The translations under genes and the position numbers were made by a program. From positions 142,258-206,257 of the IMG/VR virus record IMGVR_UViG_3300045961_000282: a DNA stretch of 64,000 nt. The stretch is one strand, 5' to 3'. Under the pieces are notes generated by a model. That model was given only the letters and a program-made list of their open reading frames with translations. It was not told the DNA's origin and searched no databases. The stretch's first letter is position 1. Each line of letters begins with the position of its first letter. Shown here piece after piece: positions 9,176-63,395 of this stretch.

Positions 9176-9247
9176 GGGGCGAACCATATCCCGCCGTCTC
9201 GGGTGTCAACCGCGGTTCATGCTCGATTCACGCGCGATGAATCCCGC

Positions 9248-10207
9248 TCACCAGTCCCGCACCGGCACCATCGCTCGCCCGATCAAGTAGGTCCCCGCCT
9301 CGGTGTGGATGTCGACGTACTCCTTGGGTTCGATGTCGGCGCTGGCATGGACGTAGTAGGCCGGGCGCACCTCGTTCGGGCGCTTGTTCGGCGCCGCCGC
9401 GCGGGCCACGGCGAGGTCGATGTCCCGCAGGTACATCCGCACCGGGTCGATCAGCACGCGGGTCAACGACTGGGTTGAGTTGTGCACCGCCGAGGACCGC
9501 CAGCCCAGTGAGGTCGCCACCTCGGCCAGTGCGTTGACGATCTCAGGGCGCCGGGAGCGGATCACGACGTGGCGGCGCAGGCCGCGGTTGAACACACCCT
9601 TGCCATCGAGCGCCCCGGCCATCAAGTCACGGCGCACCTCCACAGGCGCCCGCCGGTACGCGAGCGCGACCGGCTCGGAGAAGGCGTCGATGCGATGCAG
9701 CCGCTCCAGCAGCCCATCGACGTAGAGGTAGGCGTGCTTGCCGTGGGCAGTGCGGCGGCGAACCTTCAGGCCGCGGGCCTCGATCATCTCGGCGGCCCGG
9801 TCGGCGAGATTGGCCGGAACCGACACCGCATCCTCGATGCCGGTGGTCCGCCACAAACCATACGTCCACGGATCGAGCGGCGGCCCGGCCTCGAGCCAGT
9901 CCTCGGGGATCTCCCCGATGAGCGCGATCCGCTCGGTCACCACCGGGTCGCGGCGCTCGGCCTCGCCGGGCCACGCCTTCATCGACACCCACGCAGTTCC
10001 CAGCACGAGGTCGTGGTCGGTCGAGCAGCGGATCGGCGGGCCGGAGATCCGCAGTTCGGTGGCTCGGGGCGGGGTCTCGCGGGCTACGCGCGCGACCGGG
10101 GTCGGCTTGCCGGAGGAGTCATAGAGCAGGTCGCCGGGAGCCGCGCGCCACGCCTCGATCCATCCGGTCGGGGAGACCAGCGGGGTCTCGGGATGGATGC
10201 TCGGCAT
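9248..10207 (-). CDS. Free-standing degenerate intein (Hint + LAGLIDADG-like) without exteins
   Basis: SIHPETPLVSPTGW (block A), STDH (B), LDPWTYGLW (C), LMAGALDGKG (E), YVDI...YLIG..MVPVRD (F/G, no terminal HN). Confidence 0.7.
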   Translation of the reverse strand: MPSIHPETPLVSPTGWIEAWRAAPGDLLYDSSGKPTPVARVARETPPRATELRISGPPIRCSTDHDLVLGTAWVSMKAWPGEAERRDPVVTERIALIGEIPEDWLEAGPPLDPWTYGLWRTTGIEDAVSVPANLADRAAEMIEARGLKVRRRTAHGKHAYLYVDGLLERLHRIDAFSEPVALAYRRAPVEVRRDLMAGALDGKGVFNRGLRRHVVIRSRRPEIVNALAEVATSLGWRSSAVHNSTQSLTRVLIDPVRMYLRDIDLAVARAAAPNKRPNEVRPAYYVHASADIEPKEYVDIHTEAGTYLIGRAMVPVRDW

Positions 10208-10486
10208 GAGCGAACCATAGCAATGTCAGCCCAGCACGGCGTGGATGGTGTGCCTGTCTCCAACTGTCATTCGGCTGATCTTCACCACCTCGATGTCGCG
10301 GCGCGCGTTGAGGGACTCAAGGATGTCGCCCAGCGCGATCTCGGCCTGCGCCTCGGTCCCAGTGATGTCCACGTTGATCTGCATGAGGAAGGAGGCTACC
10401 TGCTCGTGTTGATTCTGTCAGCCCCCTTGTGCTATGCTTATTCCTGTGAGCGAGGGAAAGTCCCTCCCCAACGAAAGGAAACCCCC

Positions 10487-10666
10487 ATGCAGGTGAACGT
10501 CCCGGTCCCCTTCCCCGGCACTGCCGAGGAACGCGCCGCCAACCGCGCGACCCACTTCTTCGGCGGGATCGACGGGCGGTGCTTCGACTGCGACAGCCGC
10601 CCCACTCACGTGGCCGCCGACTACCCGTGCTGTGTCGAGCCGCCACGGATGTGGATCACCCGCTGA
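10487..10666 (+). CDS. 59-aa Cys-containing protein
   Basis: Own promoter, hairpin leader, GAAAGGA RBS and terminator. Confidence 0.7.
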   Translation: MQVNVPVPFPGTAEERAANRATHFFGGIDGRCFDCDSRPTHVAADYPCCVEPPRMWITR

Positions 10667-10741
10667 CCCGATAGAGAACCCCCTCGACCAGATACCGGTC
10701 GGGGGGGTTTTCTGTGCTCGCCTCCGTGAGCCGCCGCCAGC

Positions 10742-11659
10742 CTACCGCCAGAACTCGGGCACGGAGTGGTCGTGGTCCGTGCGGCGACACCACGGCGACG
10801 CCTCGCGCCACTTGTGGGCGTAGGACAGCGGCTCGTCGGTGTAGTCGTCGTAGTCCATCCCTTGGTGCTCGCACCACGCTCGATGCGCCGCCCGCGTGCA
10901 CTCGGGGCGGGTCCACTGGCCCAGCCCCCGCAGCAGCGCCCGCACCTCACGTGCGCGCGACCGGTGGGCTGGGGTGAACGTGCACGCCTCGACCACCAGT
11001 TCGTGGTGCATCGACCCCGGGATGGGCCGGGTGTCGGATTCCTCCCAGTTATAGCAGTCCGGCGGCAGGGCGCCCTTGCGCCACATCGTCACCGCCGTCA
11101 TCCGGCTCGGCCCCCACTCGTGGTGCAGCCGCATGAACAGGGCGTCCACCGCGTCGAACGTGTTGCGGTTGACCCACTTGTTCTCCTTGCGCGGGATGGT
11201 CATGCCCGCCCGCTCCTCGAGGATGTCCTCGGTCCAGCCCAGCGCCATCAGTGCGCGGACCTGCCACAGCGTCCACTCCGCCGGGAACCGCTTGGCGTCG
11301 CGAACCATAAGGGCCGGGTTGGACTTCACCTTCTCGACCGTCAGCAGCAGCGTGCGTTCCGTGCTGCGCGCGACGTTGACCCGGCCCGGCGTGAGCACGC
11401 GGTCCAGCGCCCGGCGCTCCATCCCGGAGATGGCCTCGATCTGGGTCCACCGCAGGCCCTGCCCCCGCAGCCACGTCAGGGCCTCGACCGACGTCGCTGC
11501 CGGAACCCGGTCGTAGTCGCTGGGTATCCCCGCCTTCAGGCGCGCCCGACGCGCTCGCCACGTTTCCGCGTGGGCGTCCTTGCAGGGGCGACAGCGGCAG
11601 CCAAGTGAGTAAGAACTCTGTGACGGTGCGCTACATGTAAAGTCTTCATCTGTGCTCAA
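10742..11659 (-). CDS. Zn-finger (GCRC..C) and HTH-like protein
   Basis: YSLGCRCRPC motif, followed by HTH-like GLRWTQIEAISG; start uncertain. Confidence 0.7.
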   Translation of the reverse strand: MSTDEDFTCSAPSQSSYSLGCRCRPCKDAHAETWRARRARLKAGIPSDYDRVPAATSVEALTWLRGQGLRWTQIEAISGMERRALDRVLTPGRVNVARSTERTLLLTVEKVKSNPALMVRDAKRFPAEWTLWQVRALMALGWTEDILEERAGMTIPRKENKWVNRNTFDAVDALFMRLHHEWGPSRMTAVTMWRKGALPPDCYNWEESDTRPIPGSMHHELVVEACTFTPAHRSRAREVRALLRGLGQWTRPECTRAAHRAWCEHQGMDYDDYTDEPLSYAHKWREASPWCRRTDHDHSVPEFWR

Positions 11660-15480: not shown

Positions 15481-15726
15481 GTGGAAATCTTATCAACCGA
15501 CCCACCTCGCGTAGGGGCGCGCGACCGGAAAGCGATCGCTCGAGGTCCTCCGTCTTCACTGAACATCGGGATATGGTTCGCCCATGTCTTCTCCGCCGCG
15601 CCTGTCCATCCAGCGCCCCGGCCAGCAGCCGACCTACTGTGCTGGCTGCGGGAAGTGGCCAGCCGATCACAACGGCCCTGATGGCGCCCGCTACTGCGGC
15701 GACTGCCATAAGCGACTGTTCGGGTC

Positions 15727-16380
15727 CTAGGAGGAGAACAACTGCCCCTGCGCCACAGCCTCGCGGGCGGCGGCGTTGACCTGCTTGGCCAGTTTCCGCG
15801 CCTCAGCAGCCGTCAGGTGCAGCGGGCCGTTGGAGGTGTGCACCAGAACCTCACCATCGACAGCAGCGGCGTGGAAGTGCGCCCGCCCCGGCAGCACCTC
15901 GAAGCAGGTGTCGGGGCCGTCGGGCACCACCACCCGCAGGCCGGTCGCGCGCAGGGCGGCGGCGATCTCCTCGGGGTCGCCGATCCAGTGCAGGAACAGC
16001 GAATCCACCAAGTCGTTGTAGACCGTCAGTCGGGCGGTGATGGAGTCGGCAGCAGCCTCCTCGGCGTGGGCCTCCATCCACTCCAGCGCCGCCTCATCGT
16101 CCTCGGGAAGGCGGTCCCAGAAGTCGTCGGTCTGCGGCATCGCATCGGCGTCGCCCAAGAAGGCTCGGGAGTCCGTCTGCTCGTGCCACCAGATCGTCTT
16201 GAGGTCCTCGGGGAACTCGCCGTCGGCGCCGACCTGCCGGGCGATCTCAGTCCATCCGCACGTCGCGCAGCACATCTCCCACGCGGCGGGCATGATCAGG
16301 TAGTCCCGAAGGGCCAGTTCCGCCAGCGCCGCGGCGAGACGCTCGCGGTCGTTCGCATGTTCGCGCGACCGGTTGCTCAT
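15727..16380 (-). CDS. Hypothetical protein with CCxxCG motif (DUF6891-like)
   Basis: EMCCATCGWTEI...WWHEQ...LFLHWIG; family recalled, not searched. Confidence 0.7.
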   Translation of the reverse strand: MSNRSREHANDRERLAAALAELALRDYLIMPAAWEMCCATCGWTEIARQVGADGEFPEDLKTIWWHEQTDSRAFLGDADAMPQTDDFWDRLPEDDEAALEWMEAHAEEAAADSITARLTVYNDLVDSLFLHWIGDPEEIAAALRATGLRVVVPDGPDTCFEVLPGRAHFHAAAVDGEVLVHTSNGPLHLTAAEARKLAKQVNAAAREAVAQGQLFSS

Positions 16381-20553: not shown

Positions 20554-20736
20554 GCGCACACACGCGCGCACCACCGTCAAGAGCGCCCGCACCGTCAAGG
20601 TGAAGTGACCCTGAACCTTCCCAAGAAGGCCCCCGCTTCGGCGGGGGCCTTCGTCGTCTCCGAGAGTTGCTGTTCCTGAGGTTCCTGTGCTATGGTTTAC
20701 CTACCAACACAACCACCACCACGAAAGGAGGCCCTC

Positions 20737-21772: not shown

Positions 21773-21825
21773 ACGTGCTATGGTTTACCTACCAACACAA
21801 CAACCACCAGAAAGAAGGAACTTCA

Positions 21826-22174: not shown

Positions 22175-22355
22175 CCAGCGCCCCGGCTTCCTCACGGAGG
22201 TCGGGGCGCTCTCGTGTGTACGTGCGCGCGACCGGCTCGTCGATCGCTCGAGCCCCACCTCGACGACTTCGGGGGTCGTATGGTTCGGTTTGCATTAGGG
22301 CACCGCGGTCTGTATAGTTGTAGCCATCACCACCACCACGACGAAAGGAACTGAC

Positions 22356-27113: not shown

Positions 27114-27602
27114 CTAGAACTTCGTGCCCGGCGCCCACGCCGCCGACAGGCGCAAACAGAACTCGACGGCGGGCGACATCGGCCAGACTTCGGAGGGGGC
27201 GAACCATATGTCGGTCGCCAACGGGCTGCGAACGTGGTCGACCGGCACCTCGGGCAGCGCAGGCCCCGGCCCCTCGGGCGCGAAGGCGTGCGGGCGGCCC
27301 CACATGTCGAGCACCGCCTCGACGTTGCGCGGGTCGCCCGTCTGGAAGGTCACGCCGCTCGGCTTGGCGTAGAGCCACGCATAGCGCTCGCCCGGCACCG
27401 CGCAGGTGACGTAGTGCGTCTTGAAGCCCGGCTGGACGTTGAACTTCAGGTCCGGCTCGTACTCGGGCAGCCAGCACAGGAAGTCCCGCACCTCACTGGG
27501 CAGGGACTCGACCCCCTCGACGCGGTTGGCCTCGAAGAACTCGATGGCTTCCTCGGGGGTGTCGAACAGGTGGGGGGTGCGGAACAAACGTGGCTTGCTC
27601 AT
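27114..27602 (-). CDS. Hypothetical protein
   Basis: GAAAGGA RBS, high GC3. Confidence 0.7.
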   Translation of the reverse strand: MSKPRLFRTPHLFDTPEEAIEFFEANRVEGVESLPSEVRDFLCWLPEYEPDLKFNVQPGFKTHYVTCAVPGERYAWLYAKPSGVTFQTGDPRNVEAVLDMWGRPHAFAPEGPGPALPEVPVDHVRSPLATDIWFAPSEVWPMSPAVEFCLRLSAAWAPGTKF

Positions 27603-28222: not shown

Positions 28223-28483
28223 TGTCAGTTCCTTTCGGTTGGTGGTGGTGGTGGCTGACAGACCTAAGCATAGCACCAGAATCAGGGGGAGTTCAAATCG
28301 ACAGACTCGGCGGAGCGGGGTCCCGGGCGGCCCTCGAGGTCGTCGACCGAACCATACGGACCCCCGGCGGCCCTCGAGGGCGGGCCTACGACTTTCCTCG
28401 GCGAGCACTTCGAGCCCGGCCCGCCGGTCGCGCGCACACACGAGAAGGCCCCGACCCCCGAAGGGGCCGGGGCCTCCCCCCGA

Positions 28484-28831: not shown

Positions 28832-29110
28832 TTGCTTCCTCCTTGGTGGTCGTCGTTGTGGTACAACCATACCACCGCATTAGTAGTGATGTCCAACTGG
28901 CTGGGTGATCGCAGACCCTCGCGCCTCACGTGTGCGCGCGACCGGCGGGCCGGGCTACGGACTAGCCCGCCGAGTTTGTGTCAGACCCCCGTCGCATGAT
29001 GGAGGCACAACAGAACAGGGAGCACGGATTATGCGATCCGCACTAGGTTGTGTATTGTTATCCATGTGAACAGGGACAGGCCCTGATCCGCTCAGTAGGA
29101 AGGACTCGCC

Positions 29111-31079: not shown

Positions 31080-31375
31080 GCCGCTCCATGCTGCTTGCCA
31101 TGCTGATCGGCGCGCTTCTGGCCGTCACGGTCTCCATCGTGCTGGTGCGCGTCCTCGCGTAACGCGCGCGCGACCGGCGGCCCTCGAGGGTCCCGAGGAT
31201 TTGGGGATCCCTAAACTCGACGAGTTCGAGGCTTCGTATGGTTCGCGCCGAGTTGTGTCATGCCCTCGATGCACACTGGTGGAACAACAGAACAGCGGGA
31301 CGGTCGATTGGACTTGCATCACCCCATCCCGTAAACTAGTTGCTACAACAACCACCACAACAGAAAGGCGCTGAC

Positions 31376-35969: not shown

Positions 35970-36240
35970 CCTACCCCACGCCCCCGAAACCCCCCGGTTC
36001 CCCTGTGGAGCCGGGGGGTTTTGCGTGCTCGCCTCACGCGTACGCGCGCGCGACCGGCAACCCTCGAGCGTTGATCGAGACTCCTCGAGACTCCTCCGGG
36101 AGGCCGTATGGTTCGCCGCCGGTGTTTGTGTCAGACCCCTGCCGCACACTGCCTGCACCAAACAGGATTTGGCGCAGGCAGGAAACTGCTGCTATGCTTG
36201 ACCCACAACAGCACGACCACCACTACCGAAAGGACACACC

Positions 36241-37933: not shown

Positions 37934-37942
37934 CTGGCGCGA

Positions 37943-38884: not shown

Positions 38885-39100
38885 TCCCCCGAACAAGAAC
38901 CCCCGGCGTGCCCCTCGCGTCGGGGGTTCTTCGTGTGTACGCGCGCGCGACCGGCGGCTCGAGGTGAGGCTATGACTTTCTCGAGCCTCCTCCGGTGGGC
39001 CGTATGGTTCGCCCCGTTCCCTCGATTTGTTACGTTCCGAATCCACGTGCTATGCTTGGGGCAACACCGCACCACCACCACTACGACGAAAGGACTTCTC

Positions 39101-40683: not shown

Positions 40684-41240
40684 CCGAGATCATCGAGCGC
40701 GTGCTCGTGTCCGAGGGCTCGACGCTGACCGTGTGCGACCCCTGCTACCTGATCGACAGGTCCGATCCGAACGACCGGCTGGTCTACGGCCACACCGAGG
40801 CCCTGCCCGACCACGGACCGTTCGCCCTGTCGGCGATCACCGAGGCGCCGCTGCACCCCGGAACGTGGGAGGTCTACGCCCACGAGGCCGTGGAGGGTGG
40901 ATGGGGACCGCGCATCTGGCACGCCGGGCTGCGTATGGTTCGCCCCCCGGCGGCGGACGACGCGACGACCACCGAGCAGGGCGTCGATGCGGGGATGGTT
41001 GGCTTCTTCGTCAACCGCCCCCGCATGACGTACAACGACACGTGGACCACCGACGACGGGGCGACCACGCTGGAACTGACCCGTCTGTTCCAGAAGGGTC
41101 ACACCTTCGCGTGGATCACCGACTCGGGCTACGGCGACGGCGCCTACCCGGTCACGGCCATCTGGTCGCAGGGCCGGATCATTCAGGTCGAAGCCACCTA
41201 CATCGGCTTCGACGGGGATGACGATAACGACGGGATTTGA
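40680..41240 (+). CDS. DUF4241-like protein
   Basis: VCDPCY, GVDAGMVGFF, SGYGDGAYPV. Confidence 0.75.
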   Translation: MTEIIERVLVSEGSTLTVCDPCYLIDRSDPNDRLVYGHTEALPDHGPFALSAITEAPLHPGTWEVYAHEAVEGGWGPRIWHAGLRMVRPPAADDATTTEQGVDAGMVGFFVNRPRMTYNDTWTTDDGATTLELTRLFQKGHTFAWITDSGYGDGAYPVTAIWSQGRIIQVEATYIGFDGDDDNDGI

Positions 41241-45366: not shown

Positions 45367-45677
45367 GCTGATCATGATAATGCTGCGCTACCACCACGCC
45401 CAAGCCGGTGAACGGTGATTCGTATCACGGAAGGAAAGCCTCGCCTGCGCGCGCGACCGGCCCCGGCGCGCGCGCTATCTCCCGAACCTTTGGCGAACCA
45501 TACGAGATATGGTTTATGACCCTGACACCGGCGAGGCCCCCCCTGCTTCGCCGGACAGACCCCCACCTCGTCAGCGGAGAGACCCCCCTTCGTAACCATA
45601 GATTTGACATGTGTCAGGGCTTGGGCTTACTCTTGTGTCAACAACGCAACACCACCACCAACCGAAAGGGGAACGAC

Positions 45678-46375: not shown

Positions 46376-46444
46376 TTTGACCTGAGCCACGTCTAGGGCT
46401 TATGGTTCTACCAACACCACAACTACGAACGAAGGGAGCACGAC

Positions 46445-54060: not shown

Positions 54061-54088
54061 AGCCCCAGCCCTGTGATGGGCTGGGGCT
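54061..54088 (+). terminator. Intrinsic terminator-like hairpin
   Basis: AGCCCCAGCCC-TGTGAT-GGGCTGGGGCT. Confidence 0.6.
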
Positions 54089-54111
54089 ATTGTCCTTCCC
54101 GAGGAGCCACG

Positions 54112-55032
54112 TTGACAGGCGAGATCACTGCACCGTTCCCATATACCGGCGGAAAGAGACGCATTGCAGCGACAGTGTGGGAGGCTCTCGGAAATCCATA
54201 CTCCTACATCGAACCATTTGGCGGATCACTGGCAGTTCTTCTTGCGGCACCACGACCTGCTGGGTTCGAGGTCGTCAACGATTCCAATCACTTCGTCACC
54301 AACTTCTGGCGCGCAATCCGAGACGACTGGAGAGATGTTCTAGACGTAGCACAGGATCCTGTGACCGAGGCGGATTTCAAGGCTCGACACCTGTGGCTGA
54401 TGACCGAAGGAACTGCTCGTCTTCAGGAACTGGATATGGTTCGCAACCCATTTGCTTACGATCCCCTCGTTGCGGGATGGTGGGCATGGGGACAGAGTCT
54501 GGCGATCTGGCAATGGTGCCTTCCGGGGGCTGATGGAACTCCGGGAGCCATGGGTGGATTGAATCAACGCCCCGATGTACGAATCGGAAAGGGAATCCTC
54601 ACTTCGACCCCTCAGGAAATCCAGCGTCTAGCGGCTCGGCTTCGCCACGTTCGAGTCCTCTGCGGAGACTGGAAAAGGGCGCTGGGCAACGGCGTTCTCC
54701 TGCTCGAACAAAGGCGGGAAGACAAGGTCACTGCTGTCTTCTTGGATCCCCCGTATCGACCTCACATGCGTGATCCGAACGCATACGGAGCCGTGGACGA
54801 GACGAAGGCTCCGCTTGTCGACAACGACACCGTAGAAGCATGGTGCCGGGGAAATGGATCAGATCCCCGACTGCGCATCGTTCTCGCCGGGCTAGAGGGG
54901 GAGTATGAACTTCCAGGCTGGCGACAGGTGGCGTGGAAAGCCCCTCAGGCAAATCCAGAGAACCGCGACGCTGAGCGACTTTGGCTGTCGCCGCACTGTC
55001 TCACATCAACCACGCAAGAAGCCTTGTTCTAA
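54112..55032 (+). CDS. D12-class DNA adenine methyltransferase
   Basis: PFPYTGGK, YIEPFGGS, EVVND, FLDPPY; GAGGAG RBS before TTG; lower GC. Confidence 0.88.
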   Translation: MTGEITAPFPYTGGKRRIAATVWEALGNPYSYIEPFGGSLAVLLAAPRPAGFEVVNDSNHFVTNFWRAIRDDWRDVLDVAQDPVTEADFKARHLWLMTEGTARLQELDMVRNPFAYDPLVAGWWAWGQSLAIWQWCLPGADGTPGAMGGLNQRPDVRIGKGILTSTPQEIQRLAARLRHVRVLCGDWKRALGNGVLLLEQRREDKVTAVFLDPPYRPHMRDPNAYGAVDETKAPLVDNDTVEAWCRGNGSDPRLRIVLAGLEGEYELPGWRQVAWKAPQANPENRDAERLWLSPHCLTSTTQEALF

Positions 55033-55412
55033 ATCCTAGGCGCACGCTCGAGCGCGTGTACGACGAGAGCGAACCATATCTCCCCACCCTCGAGGAGACC
55101 GTCTCCCGGCCGCCGCGGCCGTGTCTGAAACTGCAGGAACTCTGCAGTTTCGCCGCCGCCATCAACACGGGTCCCTCACGACGCAGGTCCGCGGAGCGTG
55201 CTGAAACTGCATCGACCCTGCAGTTTCAGCACAGTTCGAGGAGATGATCGAGACGGTCTCCTCGAGATCTCGCGAACCATATCTCTGCCGATGTCGTCGA
55301 CTCCGCCGGGGCCCGGGCACCTCGGGCCGCCTGCACCCGGATTTGACCCATGTCATGACGAGGGTGTACGATTCATACATCGCACAACCACTACCACCAG
55401 AGAGGAAGACCG

Positions 55413-56419: not shown

Positions 56420-56946
56420 GGCCCATCACCCTGAACTCGATGGCGCTAGCCGACTCCTACACGCTGCGGCGGCTGTCGGCCAACGCCGTGCGCTACCGGT
56501 TGGGCCAGCAACTGGACTGGCGGCTGGACCTCATGCTCGATGCCACCGGCCTGCACATCCTCAGCCTGCGTGGGCTGTACATGCTGGGCCCCGACCGGCA
56601 GATCGAGGAACTGTTCACCATCACCTTCGACGAGCAGGGCAACAAGCACCCCTCGGAGATGAAGGCCCCCACGATCGACGGGGAGATGGTCGTGCGCACC
56701 GAGGCGCTGCTGAAGTTGCCCGGCACCGACAAGCCTCTGGAGGTCGGGCTCGACCTGCGCATGCGCGACTTCGTGGCGCTGCCCGCGCCTGACATCACTC
56801 GCCGCGGGGAGACCTCGAAGGTCTTCGAGATGGATATCCGCGGCGGCCAGTTCATCCCCGACGGGGACACCCCCCGCCCCACCAGCACGACGATGGAGCG
56901 GCTGTCCGCCCGCACCAACGACATCATCGAGAGGAGCCTGCTGTGA
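56416..56946 (+). CDS. Hypothetical protein
   Basis: ATGA coupling. Confidence 0.7.
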   Translation: MRPITLNSMALADSYTLRRLSANAVRYRLGQQLDWRLDLMLDATGLHILSLRGLYMLGPDRQIEELFTITFDEQGNKHPSEMKAPTIDGEMVVRTEALLKLPGTDKPLEVGLDLRMRDFVALPAPDITRRGETSKVFEMDIRGGQFIPDGDTPRPTSTTMERLSARTNDIIERSLL

Positions 56947-57926
56947 GCGCCATGGATGTTTTGCATGGAAAAATCAGGCTCAAGGAGTTCTACACGACCG
57001 ACGCCGGGGCCATGCTGTGCCTCGCGATGGCCGACGTGGCCACGCTGCGCCTCGACCCCCACCGCGTCGACCGGACGTGGCAGCAGGTCATCGACCGAGC
57101 CGACCCGGAGAACACCGACCCCGACCACGACCTCAAGATCGCCGCCGGGTTCCGGGACAACTTCGTGCGGCACATCGACTTCGCGACGCCCTTCTGGGTC
57201 TCCGAGCAGATGGCCAACCTCACGATGCACGCTGCGTCGAGCCGGGAGTCGGGGATCGTCTCGATCGAAGACTTCCCCACCCAGCACGGGTTCGTATGGT
57301 TCGACAAGCCCCTCGTGCTGGAACTGCTCGATCCCGACGGGAAGACCGAGACGCTGAGCATCAAGATCTTCACGTGGCGGCTGGGCACCAACGTCTACGG
57401 ACAGCCCGGGATGGCACTGACCTACTGGAGCCAGACCGGCCAGCACATCGACACCCTCGGGCAGTACCTGCGCGCGACCGGGCAGCGCCCGTTCGTCAAG
57501 GCCGGTCCGTACGTCGTGGCCCAGCAGGGGTTCCTCACCTTCGGCACCGAGCAGGAGAACCCCACGTGGTGGGAGCAGTTCGCCGCGACGTTCGTGCACC
57601 TGATCGATCAGGAGATCCCCAACCTGTCCGAGGCGAAGCCCGACAAGAAGATGACCCGGTTGGTCAACCGTTCCAAGATCAACCTCAACCCCGTCATCGT
57701 CGTGACGCTGCGGCACCAGAAGGCGGACCCGACGCGGATCGGGACGGGGACATCCCCCGGCGTCCGGGTACTAGTGGGTGCCACTACCGGCGGCTTCTGG
57801 CGGAGCCAGCCCTGCGGACCCGGCGGAACCCAGCGGAAGAAGATCTGGATCATGCCCTTTTGGAGGGGTGCGGAGGATGCTCCCATCGTCTGGCGGCATG
57901 ACGTGATCTACCGGTGGGCACGCTGA
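56943..57926 (+). CDS. Phage protein with C-terminal G(F/H)WRxQxxG..RK.IWI.P..RG motif
   Basis: Motif recalled from phage proteins; GTGA coupling. Confidence 0.75.
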   Translation: MSAMDVLHGKIRLKEFYTTDAGAMLCLAMADVATLRLDPHRVDRTWQQVIDRADPENTDPDHDLKIAAGFRDNFVRHIDFATPFWVSEQMANLTMHAASSRESGIVSIEDFPTQHGFVWFDKPLVLELLDPDGKTETLSIKIFTWRLGTNVYGQPGMALTYWSQTGQHIDTLGQYLRATGQRPFVKAGPYVVAQQGFLTFGTEQENPTWWEQFAATFVHLIDQEIPNLSEAKPDKKMTRLVNRSKINLNPVIVVTLRHQKADPTRIGTGTSPGVRVLVGATTGGFWRSQPCGPGGTQRKKIWIMPFWRGAEDAPIVWRHDVIYRWAR

Positions 57927-58032: not shown

Positions 58033-60012
58033 ATGACCATCTACCCAGACCCCCCAGTGTGGTGGTCCGACGCGGAGAGTCTCGTCGCCGCGTCGGACCC
58101 CTCATTCGCCTCCCGCGCCCCGCAGGCCGAGGCCGCCCGGCTGATCGGTGAGGCCTTCACGACGAAGACGCACGCCGCCATCGACGCGCCCGTCGGGCTC
58201 GGAAAGTCGATGGCCTGCCTCGTTGCCGCGGAGAACGCCAAGGGCCGGACCGTGATCTCCACGGCCACCCGTGCCCTGCAGGAGCAGTTGCGCAGCATCG
58301 ACATCCCGGCGCTGCAGGACGCGGGCGTGCTGACCCGCAGCGTCGTCGTGCTCGATGGCCGCAGCCGGTGGGCCTGCCAAGCCCGCGCCGTCCATGAGTT
58401 GGACCGGATCAGCAAGCCCGGGCAGAAGGTCATCCGTGAGGTGCTCAAGCACCTGCGGGCCAACCCGGAGGAGGCCCGACGGGAAGACATCCCGGTGGCC
58501 ATCCCGGACTGGGTATGGTCACGGATCTGCTCGGACACCGACGCCTGTGGCGTGTTGGGCTGCAAGGACGGCGGCACCGCATGTGCGTACACCCGCCAGC
58601 GCAACGCCGCCCGCGCGGCGGACATCGTCATCGTCAACCACCACGTGCTGCTGGCCGACGCGGCGATCAAGGCGGGGGACCCCGTGTCGTGGGGCCTGCG
58701 CCCGGCGGAAGAGGACGACCGGCCGCGCGCGGGTGTGCTGGGCGCGTTCGCCAACCTCATCATCGACGAGGCCCACGCACTGGAGTCCGCCTGTGAGTCC
58801 TTCGGCGAGCACCGGGTGACCATCCGAGGAATCCAAGCACTGGCCACCCGAGTCTCGCGGTTGGAGATGTCCGGGGCAGCGACGCGGAGTCTCGGTGAGT
58901 GCCTCGACGAACTGCGGATCGGCATGATGGGCCTGCCGCAGAACTGCCTGATCATGCCCGCCGGGGACACGAAGCCGATCTTCGCCCAAGCCGCCGAGGC
59001 CGCCAAGCGCGCCGGGGAGCAACTGCGCCACAGCGGAGCGGCGTCCTTCGAGAGCAACGTCAGCGTGGAGATCGTGGTCAAGGCCTGCTTCTCACTGGCC
59101 CGCAAGTTGGAGGCCATCGACGAGGCGGTGCGCACCGGCAAGGACGAGTTCGGCCCGCGGGCGCCGTCCGCCGACGACACGGGGATCATCTCCCAGTTGG
59201 TCGACGCCTCCGGGTGGTTGCAGCGCAACCTGTTCTCCTGCGTCACCACCGTCGCGATGAGCGGGACGCTGGCCGTGCCGAGCAACCGGGACTGGGTGAC
59301 CCACCGGATCGGACTGTCGGCGCCGGTCGCCATGCTGCCCACCGTCTTCGACCTCGAGAACCAGCGGCTGGTGTACGTCACCCCGCGGGTCGAGGTCCCC
59401 GCGGCGGCCTCGGCGCGCAGCACCGACGCGGATGTCGCCGAGATCAAGGACCTCATCGACGCCTCCTCCGGGCGGGCGCTCGTATTGTTCCCGGCGATGA
59501 CCGACCTGAAGTACGTCCACGAGCGGCTGAAGATCGAGCACACCCTGCTGGCGCAGGGGATCACGATGGACCCGCACGCCGACACCAAGTCCGGCGACCC
59601 GGTGCGGATGAGCAACGCCGAACTGGCCCGCCGGTTCCGTGAAGACACCTCCTCCGTGCTGCTGGCGACGCGGAGTTTCTTCGAGGGGGTCGACTTCCCC
59701 GGCGACACCTGCTCGATGGTGATCGTCGTTCGGTTCCCCAACCTGCGACCCGATGAGCCGCTGACCCTCGCGCGACGCAAGCACATCGAGGCCAAGGGCG
59801 GCAACGCATGGCGGGACTATCAGGAGCCCGCCATGCAGTTGGTGTTCCGACAGGCCTGTGGCCGCGCCATCCGACGCACCACCGACCGCGGCGTGGTGGC
59901 CGTGCTGGACCCCCGCTGCAAGACCAAGGGCTATGCCGTCACCGCACTGCGGGCACTGCAGCCCTCCGACTTCACCCACGACATGGATCGGGTGCGGGCT
60001 TTCCTGTCCTGA
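58033..60012 (+). CDS. dinG: DinG/YoaA-family Fe-S ATP-dependent helicase
   Basis: Q motif RAPQ, APVGLGKS, TRALQEQL, Cys cluster, IIDEAH, SGT, FEGVDFPG, QACGRAIR. Confidence 0.92.
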   Translation: MTIYPDPPVWWSDAESLVAASDPSFASRAPQAEAARLIGEAFTTKTHAAIDAPVGLGKSMACLVAAENAKGRTVISTATRALQEQLRSIDIPALQDAGVLTRSVVVLDGRSRWACQARAVHELDRISKPGQKVIREVLKHLRANPEEARREDIPVAIPDWVWSRICSDTDACGVLGCKDGGTACAYTRQRNAARAADIVIVNHHVLLADAAIKAGDPVSWGLRPAEEDDRPRAGVLGAFANLIIDEAHALESACESFGEHRVTIRGIQALATRVSRLEMSGAATRSLGECLDELRIGMMGLPQNCLIMPAGDTKPIFAQAAEAAKRAGEQLRHSGAASFESNVSVEIVVKACFSLARKLEAIDEAVRTGKDEFGPRAPSADDTGIISQLVDASGWLQRNLFSCVTTVAMSGTLAVPSNRDWVTHRIGLSAPVAMLPTVFDLENQRLVYVTPRVEVPAAASARSTDADVAEIKDLIDASSGRALVLFPAMTDLKYVHERLKIEHTLLAQGITMDPHADTKSGDPVRMSNAELARRFREDTSSVLLATRSFFEGVDFPGDTCSMVIVVRFPNLRPDEPLTLARRKHIEAKGGNAWRDYQEPAMQLVFRQACGRAIRRTTDRGVVAVLDPRCKTKGYAVTALRALQPSDFTHDMDRVRAFLS

Positions 60013-60188
60013 TCCCCCTATCCTCATAGCCGCAGCCCCGACGGGAACTCGACCCCCCGTCGGGGCTGTTTGCTGTGCACCGACGGGGAGCCCGGAGCCC
60101 CGGGAGCCTCAGGAAGTTTATTTATAAGCCGATCCCCAAAAGCATACTAATATGCTTTTGGAGGGAGATCAGGATCCTGATATCCATC

Positions 60189-60237
60189 CATGTCACCGCA
60201 TGTCCGTCCCATGTCACCTCCATGTCACTGCCATGTC
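60189..60237. repeat. Five phased CATGTC direct repeats
   Basis: Starts at 60189, 60199, 60210, 60221, 60232. Confidence 0.8.
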
Positions 60238-60413
60238 AGCGGCACTGCTGAGCACAAGACCCGGACAACTCGGACATCTGATGTAAGAGAAGTTATGGAG
60301 TACGTATGTGTATGCCCGGGCTGGGACGTCCTGTGTCCCCCAAAACCATACGAACCCGTGAGGAGACCCGAGAAGTTTTAGAAGTTTTTAGATCCGGCCC
60401 GGCACAGCCAGTC

Positions 60414-60803
60414 CTATGTAGCCGACTCGTCGAAACGGGTCGCAGAACTTTCCCGGTACACCACCGAGGCGTTGCGGGCCCGGGACTGCTCGGCCAGATG
60501 CCGAGGATTGACGCAGCGCCGATGGGCGCAGCCGGGCCCGCCGGAACAGGTGCCGCGGGCAAGGGCCGCCTCGTGGCACAGGTGCCCGACGGTCATCCCC
60601 TCGGCGAGGTCGCGGCCCAGCCACGCCACCAGTGCGACGCGGTGCGCAGGAACGGGGCGGCCGTGGGCGGTGACCGAACCATATCCGTCCGAGTCCCGGC
60701 GGCCCATCCACCAGTGGCACCCACCTGCTGAGTCCGGCAGAACCCGAACATTCCATCGGTTCGCCACCACCCATTGGGCCTCGAGCAAGAGGAGGGATGG
60801 CAT
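60414..60803 (-). CDS. HNH-like (His-Cys) endonuclease
   Basis: GCHWW.G..DGYG, AHRVA, VGHLC...CVNPRHL....N. Confidence 0.8.
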   Translation of the reverse strand: MPSLLLLEAQWVVANRWNVRVLPDSAGGCHWWMGRRDSDGYGSVTAHGRPVPAHRVALVAWLGRDLAEGMTVGHLCHEAALARGTCSGGPGCAHRRCVNPRHLAEQSRARNASVVYRESSATRFDESAT

Positions 60804-60993
60804 GCGAACCATACTATCAGATGTCTGGGATGTCTGTCAGATCTGATGACCTGCTCGGGCCCGGGAGAACCAAACCGAACCCTCAACGAAACTCTAAACG
60901 TCTAGTTGACAGTTAGACTTTTTCCACATACAATTTCATGTAACAAGGACACACTTGTCCAATGACCATCAACACGAAAGAAGGAACGATGTC

Positions 60994-61596
60994 ATGAAGC
61001 CGACACCGACCCTGTCTGCCGCCACGACCGCGCGCCTGAAGGCCGCCCACGAGGCACGACGGGAGTACGAGCCGGGCCTGCTGGCCATCGTGGTCGCCCT
61101 GCGCGAGGCCGGGTGGCCCCTGCAGTCCATCGCCGAGCCGCTGGGCGTCAGCCGCGAGATCGTGCGCGTCTGGCAGCGCAAGGCCGCCGACCTCACCGAC
61201 CTGCCGCGGGTCTCCGTGGAGTCCCCGCCGGACTACGTGACCAAGGAGGAGATCTACTCCGAAGAGGTCGAGATGCGCCGCCGGGCCCGCGACGAGCGGG
61301 AGCGCCGGGCCCTCGAGGCCGCCCTGCCCAAACTGAAGGCACTGAAAGCCGATGCCGAGGCCCTGCGCGGCCCCAGCCGCCACGACCCGGTGAAGTCCTC
61401 CGCCAGCCGCGAGTACACCGACCTGCTCAACGCCACGCTGGCCAAGGGCGTACGAACCCGGGTGCTCGCCGAGGCACTGGGCATCAAGGAGATCACCATC
61501 CACGCCCGCCTGCGCCGCGGCGGCTACCGCAAGATGGCGCCCTCCGAGAGCCGCCCGGCATGGGCCCACCACGTGTATGTCAAGGAATCTGCGTGA
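60994..61596 (+). CDS. Double-HTH DNA-binding protein
   Basis: GWPLQSIAEPLGVSREIVR and LAEALGIKEITIHARL. Confidence 0.75.
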   Translation: MKPTPTLSAATTARLKAAHEARREYEPGLLAIVVALREAGWPLQSIAEPLGVSREIVRVWQRKAADLTDLPRVSVESPPDYVTKEEIYSEEVEMRRRARDERERRALEAALPKLKALKADAEALRGPSRHDPVKSSASREYTDLLNATLAKGVRTRVLAEALGIKEITIHARLRRGGYRKMAPSESRPAWAHHVYVKESA

Positions 61597-61747
61597 GCAC
61601 CGAACCTGAGGTGCTCGAATGCAACATCTGCTTCACGCTCATCCAGCGCGAGAGCATCGAGAAGCACCGGTACTGGCACCGGATGAGCGGCTCACCGATG
61701 GGGCTGCAGTTGTACCTGTCCCAGTTCAACATCGACGGGGAGCCGTG

Positions 61748-62023
61748 ATGACCCCGGACGAAGCCCGACGGGAACTGGGCCTCGCCCTCACCCGCGCCCG
61801 CCGCGCCCGGACGAAGACCACGGGCGGGTTCGGCGATCAGTTCGACCCGGGGCTGGTGGTGATGATCACCGAAGAGGTGGCCCTCGCCCTACTGGCCGAC
61901 GGGAAGCACCGCGCCATACCGATGCCGGTGGACACCTACAAGCCCGGCCCGGTGGGGGTCTGCGCCAAGTGCGGCGCGGCGCTGAAGGACTGGACGGTCC
62001 ATCTGCGGTGGTGGCAGCGGTGA
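61748..62023 (+). CDS. Hypothetical protein with C-terminal C2H-type motif
   Basis: Coupled to small ORF 61593-61748. Confidence 0.6.
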   Translation: MTPDEARRELGLALTRARRARTKTTGGFGDQFDPGLVVMITEEVALALLADGKHRAIPMPVDTYKPGPVGVCAKCGAALKDWTVHLRWWQR

Positions 62024-62337
62024 GCCGGTTCACGATGACCGATGCCGACGGGGAGATCATCGCGCTGGTCACCGTCACCGACTCCGGCTGGCCGCGGCGC
62101 TGGTACGCCACCGACGGGGATTCCGAGTGGGCCGGACGGGCGCCGACGAGGATGGTCGGGCTCGTCGTCGCGCTGCGCCATCTACGGCACCGGTCGCGCA
62201 CGTGGGCATTCGGGCAATACCTGCGCACCATAGGAATAGTGCTCGGTGTCGGAGTCAGGCAGTGGCACCGGGAGAACCAGCGGATGTTCACCCTTGAGCC
62301 CGGATCAGCCACCGACGGGGATAGGTTGATCCGGTGA
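62020..62337 (+). CDS. Hypothetical protein
   Basis: GTGA coupling. Confidence 0.6.
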   Translation: MSRFTMTDADGEIIALVTVTDSGWPRRWYATDGDSEWAGRAPTRMVGLVVALRHLRHRSRTWAFGQYLRTIGIVLGVGVRQWHRENQRMFTLEPGSATDGDRLIR

Positions 62338-63395
62338 GCATCGACCGAGACCGCATCGAGCGGATCTGCGCCGCGCGCTTCCCGATGTGGGCGACGATGG
62401 GGGAGAAGACCAAGGATCAGTACCGACGGCAGGCGGAGTTCTGGACCGAAGCCGTCGATCAGGCCGACGCGGATACCGCAGACCAGTGACCCCCCAGCCC
62501 GCCCCGGTGTACGTCCGCTGCCCGGCATGTGCCGTCATCGCCGTGTGTCCTGTCACCTTCACCGGCAAGGGCCCCCAGATCACCGTCACCGTCGACACCG
62601 AACCGTGGCGCACCCACGCCGAGGCATGCCGCGGGCTCGCCAACGGGCTCCCTGACACCCCCTGAACACCTCCAAACAACGAAATACCCGTTACCCGCCC
62701 GTGGCCGTATGCCACTTTTCGTCGTTTGCCCCCGGCTGGAACAACGGAAACTGTAGCCCCAGCAACGGAAACCGTAGGCCCTCCCACCACTCCACCACCC
62801 CCATCACCGCCCCCATCCGACGCGGATTGACCCCCGATCTGTGCTCCACAGCCCCTGTTCTGCGGGTTCCGCTTGACATTTGACAAGTGGCCGATAGGCT
62901 CGGCACCAACGCCCCCGGGTGCCGAGGGGATCGGGAAGTAATAGGATTGCCGCTCCCTCTACATCTGAGCCCCCACTGCACCGGCTGCACCCACTGGTGC
63001 TAGGAACCCATAGCCCCTAGGACCAACTGCACCCATTGAACCAACAGCCCCTCAGATCTTAGATCTGGGGGGCTTAGATCTATGGGTGCAGTTGGTGCAG
63101 TAGGTCCTACGGTGCAGTTGGTGCTGTTGTTCCTGTTGGTCCCGTGGGTACTAGGTACCTAGATCCTATGGGGGGTGTCAAGCGATGTCAACCAACCGAC
63201 GCGGATTGAGTTTCCGCGGTACCCAAGTACCTGAGTGGCGGGGATGTCCCGGGAGATCTCCGGGTGTGCATCTCGACCGAACCATACGGGATATGGTTCA
63301 CATTACGGGCCCCAGTAAATACCCACCCGCCCCGGCCGACGCCGACATTTCCCGGCACCCCCGCACCCGGGGTCCAGCATTTCTGGGATCGGCCG

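What the first reader, a model, noticed from the sequence alone, without database searches (positions are those of the whole stretch)
9180..63300. Second enriched motif TATGGTTCG (19 exact copies), a possible phage-specific promoter or operator
Seen on either strand at 9180, 10211, 11301, 15572, 22279, 27200, 28348, 31237, 36107, 39003, 40934, 45494, 54435, 55070, 55273, 57295, 60675, 60805, 63278; a rough estimate predicts fewer than 1. At 9180 and 10211 its TATGGT lies 6-7 nt before the ATG of the terminase and of the free-standing intein, like a leaderless -10 box. Other copies are inside genes or form inverted pairs (45494-45515, 63278-63300). Inference: a late-promoter-type element or the half-site of a dimeric regulator.
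Basis: partly seen in the sequence, partly recalled or inferred. Interest (0 to 1): 0.7.

Follow-up and report, generated by a model that had tools for sequence, protein, structure and literature searches.

The report
Coding-strand promoter box seeded through phage genome
A 206-kb uncultured phage of a high-GC Gram-positive bacterium has removed nearly all promoter-like "-10 boxes" from its genes except one, TATGGTT(CG), which it has written about 85 times on the transcribed-sense strand, so this box most likely marks a phage-specific class of start sites for the host RNA polymerase.

Summary
TATGGTTCG occurs 19 times at the stated coordinates, against 0.13 expected, and 37 times in the whole 206,257-bp phage record.

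The real core is TATGGTT, with consensus c-CG/GA-TATGGTT-CG-c. It has 38 copies in the window and 85 in the genome.

- **Intergenic copies.** 24 of 30 point at the 5' end of the next gene or tRNA. Five sit 6-7 nt before an ATG, the leaderless layout typical of actinobacteria. Several lie 18 bp after a -35-like hexamer.
- **Genic copies.** 45 are on the sense strand against 3.5 expected from synonymous-codon shuffling. About a quarter of all codon contexts that could encode the motif do so. These copies follow local gene direction and show no pull towards gene starts.
- **Other TANNNT hexamers.** They are depleted about 3-4-fold on both strands of genes.
- **Relatives.** The five short contigs with terminase at least 73% identical share the enrichment.

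No phage RNA polymerase, sigma region 2 or integrase was found.

Best reading: the -10 plus discriminator of a -35-independent promoter class, distinct from the phage's canonical TTGAC-N17-TGnTAnnnTT promoters. "Late" timing and the recognising factor remain untested. A stoperator-like regulator site is the main rival.

The parts
9180..9188 (-). TATGGTTCG. Intergenic, in a leaderless promoter layout in front of the terminase gene: TTGACA, 15 bp, TATGGT, 7 nt, ATG at 9175.
   Evidence: Relative L032 has the same 9-mer 37 nt before its terminase ATG. L016 has TAGGGT-6 nt-ATG there.
10211..10219 (-). TATGGTTCG. Intergenic, 6 nt before the ATG (10207) of the 319-aa ORF, directly after the stop of the upstream 52-aa gene.
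   Evidence: The element is absent at this spot in L016 and L033, where the two genes overlap.
11301..11309 (-). TATGGTTCG inside a gene (10742-11422, -), sense strand, read as ..T ATG GTT CG. (Met-Val-Arg).
15572..15580 (+). TATGGTTCG. 6 nt before the ATG (15584) of an uncalled 48-aa CxxC...CxxC ORF, and 43 bp downstream of GCGCGACCGG (15519).
22279..22287 (+). TATGGTTCG. The distal element of an intergenic module: GCGCGACCGG at 22226, then CTCGAG, then TCGACG, then 13 bp, then the motif. A canonical promoter TTTGCA-18-TATAGT (22289-22318) and the gene start at 22356 follow.
27200..27208 (-). TATGGTTCG inside a 165-aa gene (27114-27611, -), sense strand, 95 nt before the next gene's start.
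28348..28356 (-). TATGGTTCG. Intergenic module element, 67 bp after GCGCGACCGG (28424-28433, -). CTCGAG lies 16 bp upstream. TGCTATGCTT (28266), a CA-rich leader and the gene start (28222) follow.
31237..31245 (+). TATGGTTCG. Intergenic module element, 59 bp after GCGCGACCGG (31168). TCGACG lies 14 bp upstream. The gene starts at 31376.
36107..36115 (+). TATGGTTCG. Intergenic module: terminator-like hairpin 35999-36018, GCGCGACCGG at 36048, CTCGAG 17 bp upstream of the motif, then TGCTATGCTT (36193) and the gene start at 36241.
39003..39011 (+). TATGGTTCG. Intergenic module: terminator-like hairpin 38912-38926, GCGCGACCGG at 38945, CTCGAG 17 bp upstream of the motif, then TTTGTT-18-TGCTATGCTT (39051) and the gene start at 39101.
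40934..40942 (+). TATGGTTCG inside a 186-aa gene (40680-41240, +), sense strand.
45494..45514 (.). Inverted pair CGAACCATA-cgaga-TATGGTT. The minus arm (45494-45502) lies 127 nt upstream of minus-strand tRNA-Cys (45294-45366). The plus arm (45508-45514) faces the next plus-strand gene.
45594..45600 (-). TATGGTT abutting the -35 (TTGACA) of a plus-strand promoter. It points leftwards, towards tRNA-Cys.
54435..54443 (+). TATGGTTCG inside the D12-class adenine methyltransferase gene (54076-55032, +), sense strand.
55070..55078 (-). TATGGTTCG in the 380-bp spacer after the methyltransferase gene, pointing against the flanking plus-strand genes. No convincing minus-strand ORF lies downstream.
55273..55281 (-). 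TATGGTTCG in the same spacer with the same opposing orientation. It remains unexplained and may drive an antisense or non-coding transcript.
57295..57303 (+). TATGGTTCG inside a 327-aa gene (56943-57926, +), sense strand.
60675..60683 (-). TATGGTTCG inside a 97-aa gene (60414-60707, -), sense strand, read as TAT GGT TCG (Tyr-Gly-Ser).
60805..60813 (-). TATGGTTCG. Intergenic, 97 nt upstream of that 97-aa gene. It is divergent from the two-HTH 200-aa gene, which has its own TTGACA-17-TACAAT promoter.
63278..63298 (.). Inverted pair CGAACCATA-cggga-TATGGTT inside a ~740-bp non-coding stretch (about 62660-63395) rich in palindromes, between the 3' ends of convergent genes.
3866..3872 (+). TATGGTT followed by 5 nt and then the ATG at 3878 of a MarR-like 166-aa gene, so ATG lies 6 nt after TATGGT (leaderless layout).
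20691..20697 (+). TATGGTT as the -10 of a leadered promoter: TTGCTG, 18 bp ending in TGC, TATGGTT, CA-rich leader, GAAAGGAGG, ATG.
21779..21785 (+). TATGGTT as the -10 of a canonical promoter: TGGACA, 18 bp, TG, TATGGT, with the same leader as the promoter at 20691.
28865..28871 (-). TATGGTT as the -10 of a canonical promoter: TGGACA, 18 bp, TG, TATGGT, then leader, AAGGAGG and GTG.
46401..46407 (+). TATGGTT as the -10 of a canonical promoter: TTGACC, 18 bp, TATGGT, then leader, AAGGGAG and ATG.
8201..8207 (-). TATGGTT inside the terminase gene (CGT ATG GTT). It is conserved in L016 and replaced by synonymous CGC/CGG ATG GTC in L032, L033 and L017.
8453..8459 (-). TATGGTT inside the terminase gene (GAT ATG GTT C), conserved in L016, L032 and L033.
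9856..9862 (-). TATGGTT inside the 319-aa ORF (TAT GGT T). It is conserved in L016 and L033 and is the synonymous TAC GGC T in L032.

Best explanation
TATGGTT(CG) is most likely the -10 heptamer plus discriminator of a promoter class that needs no -35 box. It would be read on the non-template strand by the host's sigma-A-type RNA polymerase, probably with help or retargeting from a phage factor that I could not identify.

The phage appears to use the box in three ways.
- **Leaderless promoters.** The transcript would start at the A of an ATG 6-7 nt downstream. Examples are the terminase, the 319-aa ORF, a MarR-like regulator, a 48-aa zinc-ribbon ORF and an ORF at genome 50482.
- **Upstream member of tandem promoters.** In the intergenic modules of the small-gene arm the order is: terminator hairpin, GCGCGCGACCGG, CTCGAG, TATGGTTCG, a canonical TTGAC-N17-TGnTAnnnTT promoter, a CA-rich leader, then the gene.
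- **Internal sense-strand start sites.** These are written into coding sequence with rare synonymous codons wherever the protein allows. RNA polymerase could then load in the right direction all along the tightly packed arms.

At the same time, other TANNNT hexamers have been purged from both strands of genes.

Shown: the enrichment, the geometry, the orientation, the codon evidence and the sharing with close relatives. Inferred: that transcription starts there, which polymerase form reads the box, and when in infection it acts.
For: **Enrichment**
- 19 copies against 0.13 expected in the window.
- 85 TATGGTT in the genome. 30 lie in 23.7 kb of intergenic DNA and 55 in about 182 kb of genes.

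**Promoter geometry**
- ATG lies 6-7 nt after TATGGT at five copies, each opening a real ORF.
- TTGACC or TGGACA sits at an 18-bp spacing, followed by a leader and a Shine-Dalgarno sequence, at window 21779, 28865 and 46401.
- 24 of 30 intergenic copies face the 5' end of the next gene or tRNA at 5-230 nt. With the 48-aa ORF counted, this becomes 25.
- The phage's canonical promoters use the same TAnnnTT heptamer frame: TATGCTT 12 times, plus TAAGGTT, TATAGTT and TAGGGTT.

**Comparative evidence**
- L032 keeps the exact TATGGTTCG directly after the upstream stop codon, 37 nt before its terminase ATG, with a GGGAGG Shine-Dalgarno sequence.
- L016 has TAGGGT-6 nt-ATG at that position.
- Five contigs with terminase at least 73% identical hold 10 copies against 0.82 expected, 9 of them on the gene strand. 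Six contigs at 71% or less hold 2 against 3.6 expected.

**Selection inside genes**
- Sense strand 45 against 3.5 expected, the top 7-mer of the genome. Antisense 8 against 2.3.
- 20 of 50 Tyr-Gly-[T..] sites, 18 of 93 [..T]-Met-Val sites and 7 of 34 frame-1 sites carry the motif. Codon usage predicts 0.6, 1.1 and 0.24.
- TATGGT followed by A, C or G is depleted: 4 observed against about 12 expected.

**Link to transcription, not replication**
- Genes whose direction opposes their arm hold 6 sense and 0 antisense copies.

**Purge of rival -10 boxes**
- TANNNT observed/expected is 0.26-0.45 in genes. The same ratio is 0.72 for TA overall and 0.8-0.9 for TANNNC and TANNNG.

**Dependence on host polymerase**
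- No DFDGD catalytic motif was found.
- PF00940 gave no match, although that search's control did not ring.
- No sigma region 2 was found.

**Against a global silencer**
- The motif lies after terminator-like hairpins and upstream of unrelated canonical promoters.
- No tyrosine or serine integrase was found.
Against: - No transcription start site data exist. No RNA run was listed.
- Genic copies show no bias towards the next gene start. That is unusual for promoters and equally compatible with a density-type signal.
- The equally good -10 variant TATGCTT is not enriched in genes: 1 observed against 1.1 expected. Something recognises the GG and the flanking CG specifically, and no reader was identified.
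- Six intergenic copies, five once the 48-aa ORF is counted, face the 3' end of a gene.
- Two identical AACCATA-N5-TATGGTT palindromes look like a dimer operator.
- Upstream partners (CTCGAG, TCGACG) sit at variable distances of 10-17 bp.
- Genome-wide gene calls are my own codon-model predictions. They were checked against public calls for only three stretches.
Confidence: 0.55

Rival explanations
1. Stoperator-like sites. A phage-encoded DNA-binding protein recognises the asymmetric c-CG-TATGGTT-CG-c sequence. It would act as an operator where the site coincides with a -10 box, and as an orientation-dependent block to elongating polymerase where the site lies in transcribed DNA. This is how the cluster A mycobacteriophage repressors work.
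For: - The site is asymmetric and dispersed, at 0.41 sites per kb, and its orientation tracks transcription. This is the published signature of stoperators (PMC9283540, read).
- Two palindromic arrangements share the same 5-bp spacer.
- The phage encodes several candidate readers: a MarR-like protein whose own gene sits behind a copy, a 200-aa protein with two HTH regions, and a 248-aa protein with an N-terminal HTH.
Against: - No tyrosine or serine integrase was found, so there is no sign of a prophage state to silence.
- About 40 canonical promoters carry other -10 boxes and would escape such a repressor.
- In the intergenic modules the motif lies just after terminator-like hairpins and upstream of the canonical promoter, where a roadblock adds nothing.
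- The exact 6-7-nt spacing to ATG at five genes is what a -10 box needs, not what an operator needs.
- The two HTH proteins show no sequence match to the solved repressor.
Confidence: 0.2
2. Elongation signal rather than start site. The genic copies would be -10-like sequences on the non-template strand. They would be recaptured by sigma still bound to elongating polymerase, or by a phage factor loaded there as RfaH is at ops. The result would be programmed pauses that couple transcription to translation or make the complex resistant to termination.
For: - Sense-strand specificity, no positional bias relative to gene starts, and near-uniform density of 5-12 copies per 20 kb.
- The sequence is a TANNNT hexamer. 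From general knowledge, this is what sigma-dependent pause sites look like.
Against: - It does not explain the intergenic copies with a -35 box or with leaderless spacing, which look like true start sites.
- Sigma-dependent pauses are known close to promoters, not kilobases inside operons.
- No NusG/RfaH-like factor was looked for or found.
Confidence: 0.1
3. RNA-level motif. UAUGGUU(CG) in phage messages would be bound or cut by a phage or host RNA-binding protein or nuclease, for example to mark phage transcripts.
For: - A strong sense-strand bias means the motif is present in the mRNAs.
- Use of all three reading frames rules out a codon-level effect but not an RNA-level one.
Against: - In the leaderless copies and those with a -35 box, the motif lies upstream of the predicted transcript start. 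It would not be in that RNA.
- 30 copies are intergenic, and many lie after terminator-like hairpins.
- Antisense copies are also somewhat enriched: 8 observed against 2.3 expected.
Confidence: 0.07
4. Polar genome signal of the Chi or KOPS kind. The motif would be read by a DNA translocase or nuclease and oriented relative to replication, packaging or DNA ends rather than to genes.
For: - Overall the copies point leftwards in the left arm and rightwards in the right arm, like a replichore-type skew.
- Copies are created by synonymous codon choice, as expected for a motif selected for density.
Against: - In the 13 kb of genes that run against their arm, all 6 copies follow the gene and none follows the arm. 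The chance of this is about 5e-5 given the 33:8 ratio elsewhere.
- Orientation flips with every small gene block between 142 and 172 kb.
- Copies are enriched four-fold per kb in intergenic DNA, in promoter positions.
Confidence: 0.03

Closest known systems
Actinobacterial sigma-A promoters with only a -10 box (TANNNT), including leaderless genes whose transcript starts at the A of ATG (general knowledge of Mycobacterium, Streptomyces and Corynebacterium transcription)
   Same: - A TANNNT hexamer on the non-template strand.
- ATG 6-7 nt downstream at five genes.
- A -35 box that is optional.
- Co-orientation with the downstream gene.
- A WhiB-family gene in the phage points to an actinobacterial host.
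   Different: - One single heptamer with fixed flanks is used 85 times.
- It is seeded into coding sequence on the sense strand.
- All other TANNNT hexamers are purged.
- Host promoters show no such uniformity.
Phage T4 late promoters (TATAAATA, read by gp55 with gp33 and the sliding clamp; general knowledge)
   Same: - A short -10-only box of 8-9 bp serves as the whole promoter.
- There are dozens of copies, all co-oriented with genes, some inside upstream coding sequence.
- They coexist with canonical early promoters, sometimes in tandem.
   Different: - No gp55-like or other sigma was detected, although the sigma region 2 search is weak for such divergent proteins.
- The host, the sequence and the GC-rich context are all different.
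- Copies here are spread at random within genes rather than placed before late genes.
- Timing is unknown.
Stoperators of cluster A mycobacteriophages (L5 gp71 family; PMC9283540)
   Same: - Asymmetric sites, more than 20 per genome.
- Orientation strictly tied to the direction of transcription.
- The same sequence overlaps a core promoter element at some sites.
   Different: - Stoperators are 13-mers, lie mainly in short intergenic spaces, and belong to temperate phages with a known two-domain repressor.
- Here the core is 7-9 bp and most copies are inside genes.
- No integrase or recognisable repressor was found.
phiKZ-type late promoters (TATG at the start site, read by a phage multisubunit polymerase; PMC4666361, listed but not read here)
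   Same: Both are jumbo phages, and in both a short motif containing TATG serves as the promoter.
   Different: This phage shows no polymerase catalytic motif DFDGD in any frame. The context is GC-rich, and the motif sits at the -10 position rather than at the start site.

Membership tests
Sigma-70/sigma-A type promoter (-10 element) | TANNNT hexamer on the non-template strand, co-oriented with the gene it serves | tested here: met
   TATGGT fits TANNNT. 24 of 30 intergenic copies face the next gene or tRNA at 5-230 nt.
Sigma-70/sigma-A type promoter (-10 element) | -35 hexamer 16-19 bp upstream | tested here: inconclusive
   Present at a few copies: TTGACC-18, TGGACA-18 twice, and TTGACA-15 before the terminase. 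Absent at most copies. Many actinobacterial promoters also lack a -35 box (general knowledge).
Sigma-70/sigma-A type promoter (-10 element) | Transcription start 6-8 nt downstream of the hexamer | not testable with these tools
   No RNA run was listed. Indirect support: ATG lies 6-7 nt downstream at five copies, each opening a real ORF.
T4-type late promoter system | Short -10-only consensus without a -35 box, present in many co-oriented copies | tested here: met
T4-type late promoter system | Phage-encoded late sigma (gp55-like) and co-activator | tested here: inconclusive
   No Sigma70_r2 match in six frames, and only HTH-type region 4 matches in non-sigma proteins. gp55-like proteins are too divergent for this test.
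T4-type late promoter system | Activity confined to late genes and late times | not testable with these tools
   No expression data. Copies occur in all genome regions at 5-12 per 20 kb.
Cluster A mycobacteriophage stoperators | Asymmetric repeated site whose orientation follows transcription | tested here: met
   Sense 45 against antisense 8. In minority-orientation genes, 6 sense and 0 antisense.
Cluster A mycobacteriophage stoperators | Cognate immunity repressor (N-terminal HTH plus stoperator domain) | tested here: inconclusive
   The two HTH proteins tested have no sequence match to solved structures of that repressor. Not all proteins were tested and no fold comparison was done.
Cluster A mycobacteriophage stoperators | Temperate life style (integrase or partition system) | tested here: not met
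   No Phage_integrase or Resolvase match, with positive controls ringing. Partition genes were not searched.
Chi / KOPS-like polar motifs | Orientation set by replication arm or DNA ends, independent of local gene direction | tested here: not met
   All 6 copies in genes that oppose their arm follow the gene.
Promoters of phage-encoded RNA polymerases (phiKZ, AR9, T7, N4 types) | A phage RNA polymerase gene | tested here: not met
   No [FY]DGD-type catalytic motif in predicted proteins or in six frames. No PF00940 match, although that search's control did not ring. An N4-like divergent enzyme is not strictly excluded.

The most novel reading that the evidence does not exclude
The phage runs a private promoter code. 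Its genome has been cleared of generic -10-like hexamers. A single box, TATGGTTCG, has been written into about a quarter of all codon contexts that can hold it, always on the coding strand. This implies an unrecognised phage factor that makes host RNA polymerase read only this box without a -35 element. That would be a late or global transcription system of actinobacterial jumbo phages, analogous to T4 gp55/gp33 but evolutionarily unrelated. It would initiate from a carpet of internal promoters rather than from a few operon promoters.
Probability: 0.25. Interest if true: 0.8.

Novelty: new variant of a known kind. Interest (0 to 1): 0.6.

Why it matters
Late and middle promoters of actinobacterial phages are poorly defined. 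Here the sequence alone points to a candidate.

If TATGGTTCG is a -35-independent promoter, it supplies a ready-made, testable promoter and a handle for finding the factor that retargets actinobacterial RNA polymerase.

The codon-level result is also unusual. Rare synonymous codons fill 14-37% of permissive sites, depending on genome region, while other -10 boxes are purged. This is a clear example of regulatory DNA shaping coding sequence in a virus. It could be used as a search signature for similar systems in other uncultured phages.

Tried and rejected
- **Cultured and IMG/VR relatives.**
  - megablast of 5 kb against phage genomes found nothing.
  - The palindrome pattern and two further proteins found no IMG/VR relatives.
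  - The nearest IMG/VR relative, at 53% terminase identity, shows no enrichment: 11 copies against 13 for the reversed control.
- **Literature.** Searches for TATGGT with phage promoters, and for actinobacteriophage late promoters, gave nothing relevant.
- **RNA evidence.** One DNA run holds the sequence and is probably the source sample. No RNA run was listed.
- **Protein-DNA complex.** The prediction for the MarR-like protein on the palindrome was not folded by the tool. It is not evidence either way.
- **First gene caller.** A caller based only on third-position GC gave many shadow ORFs. I replaced it with a codon-model caller.
- **Fixed -35-like partner.** I considered one for the 9-mer, but CTCGAG and TCGACG lie at variable distances of 10-17 bp. 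CTCGAG is four times denser in intergenic DNA. I treat it as a module component, not a -35 box.
- **tRNA T-loop resemblance (GGTTCG).** Rejected, because no A follows the motif consistently.
- **General property of related jumbo phages.** Rejected. 47 kb of annotated genes of Microbacterium phage Big4 show no outlier 7-mer and only mild TANNNT depletion of 0.75.
- **Two larger relative contigs.** Their DNA could not be fetched.

Full report
**Setting**

The window is the last 64 kb of a 206,257-bp IMG/VR virus record with 65.7% GC, estimated 99% complete.
- The terminase is T4-like and carries an intein. Its nearest cultured relatives are Microbacterium and Gordonia phages at 42-52% identity.
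- The phage encodes WhiB-family and Lsr2-family proteins, which point to an actinobacterial host.
- It has no tyrosine or serine integrase and no sigma region 2.
- It has no DFDGD polymerase motif and no PF00940 match, although the control for that last search did not ring.
- It therefore most likely depends on host RNA polymerase and shows no sign of lysogeny.

**The observation**

The genome has 37 copies.

The conserved unit is the heptamer TATGGTT.
- 85 of the 92 TATGGT in the genome are followed by T.
- C follows in 57 of 85 and G in 45 of 85. CG or GA precedes the heptamer.
- The window holds 38 heptamers.

The 6- and 7-nt spacings to the ATGs at 10207 and 9175 are correct. The public gene call starts the terminase at that ATG. 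Both inverted pairs are real, but the second arm is only the heptamer.

**Gene map**

I trained a codon model on long ORFs and called 296 genes covering 88.5% of the genome. Public calls for three stretches agreed on the points that matter. Genes run mostly leftwards from 1 to 131 kb and mostly rightwards from 161 to 202 kb. Small blocks of opposite direction are interspersed.

**Intergenic copies behave like promoters**

Thirty heptamers lie in 23.7 kb of intergenic DNA, about four times the genic density.
- Twenty-four face the 5' end of the next gene or tRNA at 5-230 nt. A 25th faces a 48-aa zinc-ribbon ORF that the public annotation missed.
- Five have an ATG 6-7 nt after TATGGT: the MarR-like gene, the terminase, the 319-aa ORF, the zinc-ribbon ORF and an ORF at genome 50482. 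This is the standard leaderless layout of actinobacteria (general knowledge).
- Others are the -10 box of promoters with TTGACC or TGGACA at 18 bp, a CA-rich leader and a GAAAGG-type Shine-Dalgarno sequence.
- The minus arm of the pair at 45494 lies 127 nt upstream of the only minus-strand gene nearby, tRNA-Cys. That pair therefore reads as divergent promoters.

**Two promoter classes**

The small-gene arm holds about 40 canonical promoters of the form gATTTGAC, 17-18 bp often ending in TGc, TAnnnTT, leader, gene. Their -10 boxes vary: TATGCTT 12 times, plus TAAGGTT, TATAGTT, TAGGGTT, TATTGTT and TATGGTT.

The exact 9-mer is different. It has CG or GA upstream instead of TGn, CG downstream, and usually no -35 box.

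In at least eight intergenic regions the 9-mer or heptamer sits in a recurring module:
1. a terminator-like hairpin;
2. tcgtgtgtacGCGCGCGCGACCGG;
3. CTCGAG;
4. often a second CTCGAG or TCGACG;
5. the motif, 43-49 bp after GCGCGACCGG in six modules and 59 and 67 bp in two more;
6. a canonical promoter.

This looks like tandem promoters of two classes.

**Genic copies**

Forty-five heptamers lie on the sense strand of genes and eight on the antisense strand.
- A shuffle that keeps each protein and its codon usage expects 3.5 and 2.3. TATGGTT is the most enriched sense 7-mer of the genome.
- All three reading frames are used.
- The motif occupies 20 of 50 Tyr-Gly-[T..] sites, 18 of 93 [..T]-Met-Val sites and 7 of 34 frame-1 sites. 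Codon usage predicts 0.6, 1.1 and 0.24.
- Occupancy is 14-37% in every genome region.
- TATGGT followed by A, C or G is depleted.
- TATGCTT, a common -10 box of the canonical promoters, is not enriched in genes.
- Genic copies are no closer to the next gene start than random positions. They are spread fairly evenly along the genome.
- In the 13 kb of genes that run against their arm, all six copies follow the gene. The signal is therefore tied to transcription or the coding strand, not to replication or packaging.

**Purge of other -10-like hexamers**

Within genes, TANNNT is at 0.45 of expectation on the sense strand, or about 0.35 without TATGGT and TATTGT, and 0.26 on the antisense strand. 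TA overall is at 0.72 and TANNNC and TANNNG are at 0.8-0.9. The genome avoids stray -10 boxes on both strands while multiplying one chosen box on one strand.

**Relatives**

Five short contigs with terminase 73-85% identical total 22 kb. They hold 10 heptamers against 0.82 expected, nine of them on the gene strand. Six contigs at 71% identity or less hold 2 against 3.6 expected.

Three genic copies in the window are shared with some of these relatives at orthologous codons. Where a copy is absent, the protein is unchanged and the codons are synonymous, for example CGT ATG GTT against CGC ATG GTC.

Upstream of the terminase gene the three relatives differ.
- L032 keeps the exact 9-mer with a 37-nt leader and a Shine-Dalgarno sequence.
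- L016 has TAGGGT-6 nt-ATG.
- L033 has overlapping genes at that position.

The distant cultured relative Big4 shows no such outlier and only mild TANNNT depletion.

**Interpretation**

The simplest account that covers both intergenic and genic copies is a -35-independent promoter box read by host polymerase. Because GG and the flanks matter, and because other equally good -10 boxes are not multiplied, a phage factor probably confers the specificity. Candidates are WhiB, a MarR-like protein and two HTH proteins. None could be tested.

The main rival is a stoperator-like regulator site (PMC9283540). It shares the orientation rule and the dispersal. It fits poorly with the absence of an integrase, with the many canonical promoters that would escape repression, with the position of the motif behind terminators, and with the exact leaderless spacing.

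Sigma-dependent pausing and an RNA-level role remain possible for the genic copies. A Chi or KOPS-type role is contradicted.

**Limits**

There are no transcript data. Genome-wide gene calls are my own. Relatives are few and short. 'Late' timing is untested. Five or six intergenic copies, notably 55070, 55273 and the pair at 63278, have no obvious gene to serve.

Noticed in passing
window 2830-62190 (32 copies); for example 15519, 22226, 25125, 28424(-), 31168, 36048, 38945, 45451: The motif GCGCGACCGG, often extended to cgtgtgtacGCGCGCGCGACCGG, has 35 copies in the genome, 32 of them in the window. Eight copies lie 43-67 bp upstream of a TATGGTT. Between 148 and 200 kb most copies are on the plus strand, even inside minus-strand genes. 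Unlike TATGGTT, it therefore does not follow gene direction. It also occurs in relative L016.
   Followed up: partly
whole genome (G000:C1:1-206257): GAGCTC is completely absent from 206 kb, whereas CTCGAG has 54 copies. GAACTG is three-fold over-represented on the sense strand of genes (166 observed against 53 expected). This suggests avoidance of a SacI-type restriction site through Glu-Leu codon choice.
   Followed up: no
window 28976, 31253, 36126: A conserved element, (T)TTGTGTCAgaCCCc.g.CGCA..., then CAACAGAACAG.GGGA, recurs in three intergenic regions downstream of the TATGGTTCG or GCGCGACCGG modules. It could be a further promoter, an operator or a structured leader.
   Followed up: no
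window 15584-15730 (+): An uncalled 48-aa ORF with two CxxC pairs (zinc-ribbon type) starts 6 nt after the TATGGT of the copy at 15572. Its end overlaps the 3' end of a convergent gene.
   Followed up: partly
window about 62660-63395: A stretch of about 740 bp without convincing genes lies between convergent genes. It is rich in palindromes (CCCGGGAGATCTCCGGG, AGATCT, GGTACC) and short repeats and contains the second TATGGTT inverted pair. It may be an origin or another cis-acting region.
   Followed up: no
window 55033-55412: The spacer after the D12-class methyltransferase gene holds two minus-strand TATGGTTCG copies that point back into that gene, together with repeated CTGCAGTTTCAG-like segments. 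GC content is lower here, at 62.5% over 52-56 kb. An antisense transcript is possible.
   Followed up: partly
window 5782-6138 (-), 16498-16899 (+), 3878-4378 (+), 33447-35969 (+), 54076-55032 (+); genome 433-1749 (-): The phage encodes an Lsr2-like nucleoid protein, a WhiB-like factor, a MarR-like protein and three DNA methyltransferases (MmeI-like, D12 class, and N6/N4 type).
   Followed up: partly
window 37862-37934 (+) and 45294-45366 (-): Two tRNA genes, Trp (CCA) and Cys (GCA). The Trp gene sits directly behind a canonical TTGACA-18-TATGCT promoter.
   Followed up: partly
L016:12500-13000: The end of the relative's contig is a low-complexity block. It holds about 14 copies of TCAATGC(AT) interleaved with CTCCTC runs, possibly an origin or a terminal region.
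   Followed up: no
genome 108008-119938 (-): A 3,976-aa ORF whose only Pfam match is an RNase_T-type exonuclease domain (residues 790-991). It carries five sense TATGGTT copies and one antisense copy.
   Followed up: no
window 58033-64000: A 17,158-bp contig assembled from another public run encodes the identical helicase. Its gene list runs slightly past the end of this record, so the record may not end at a physical genome end.
   Followed up: no
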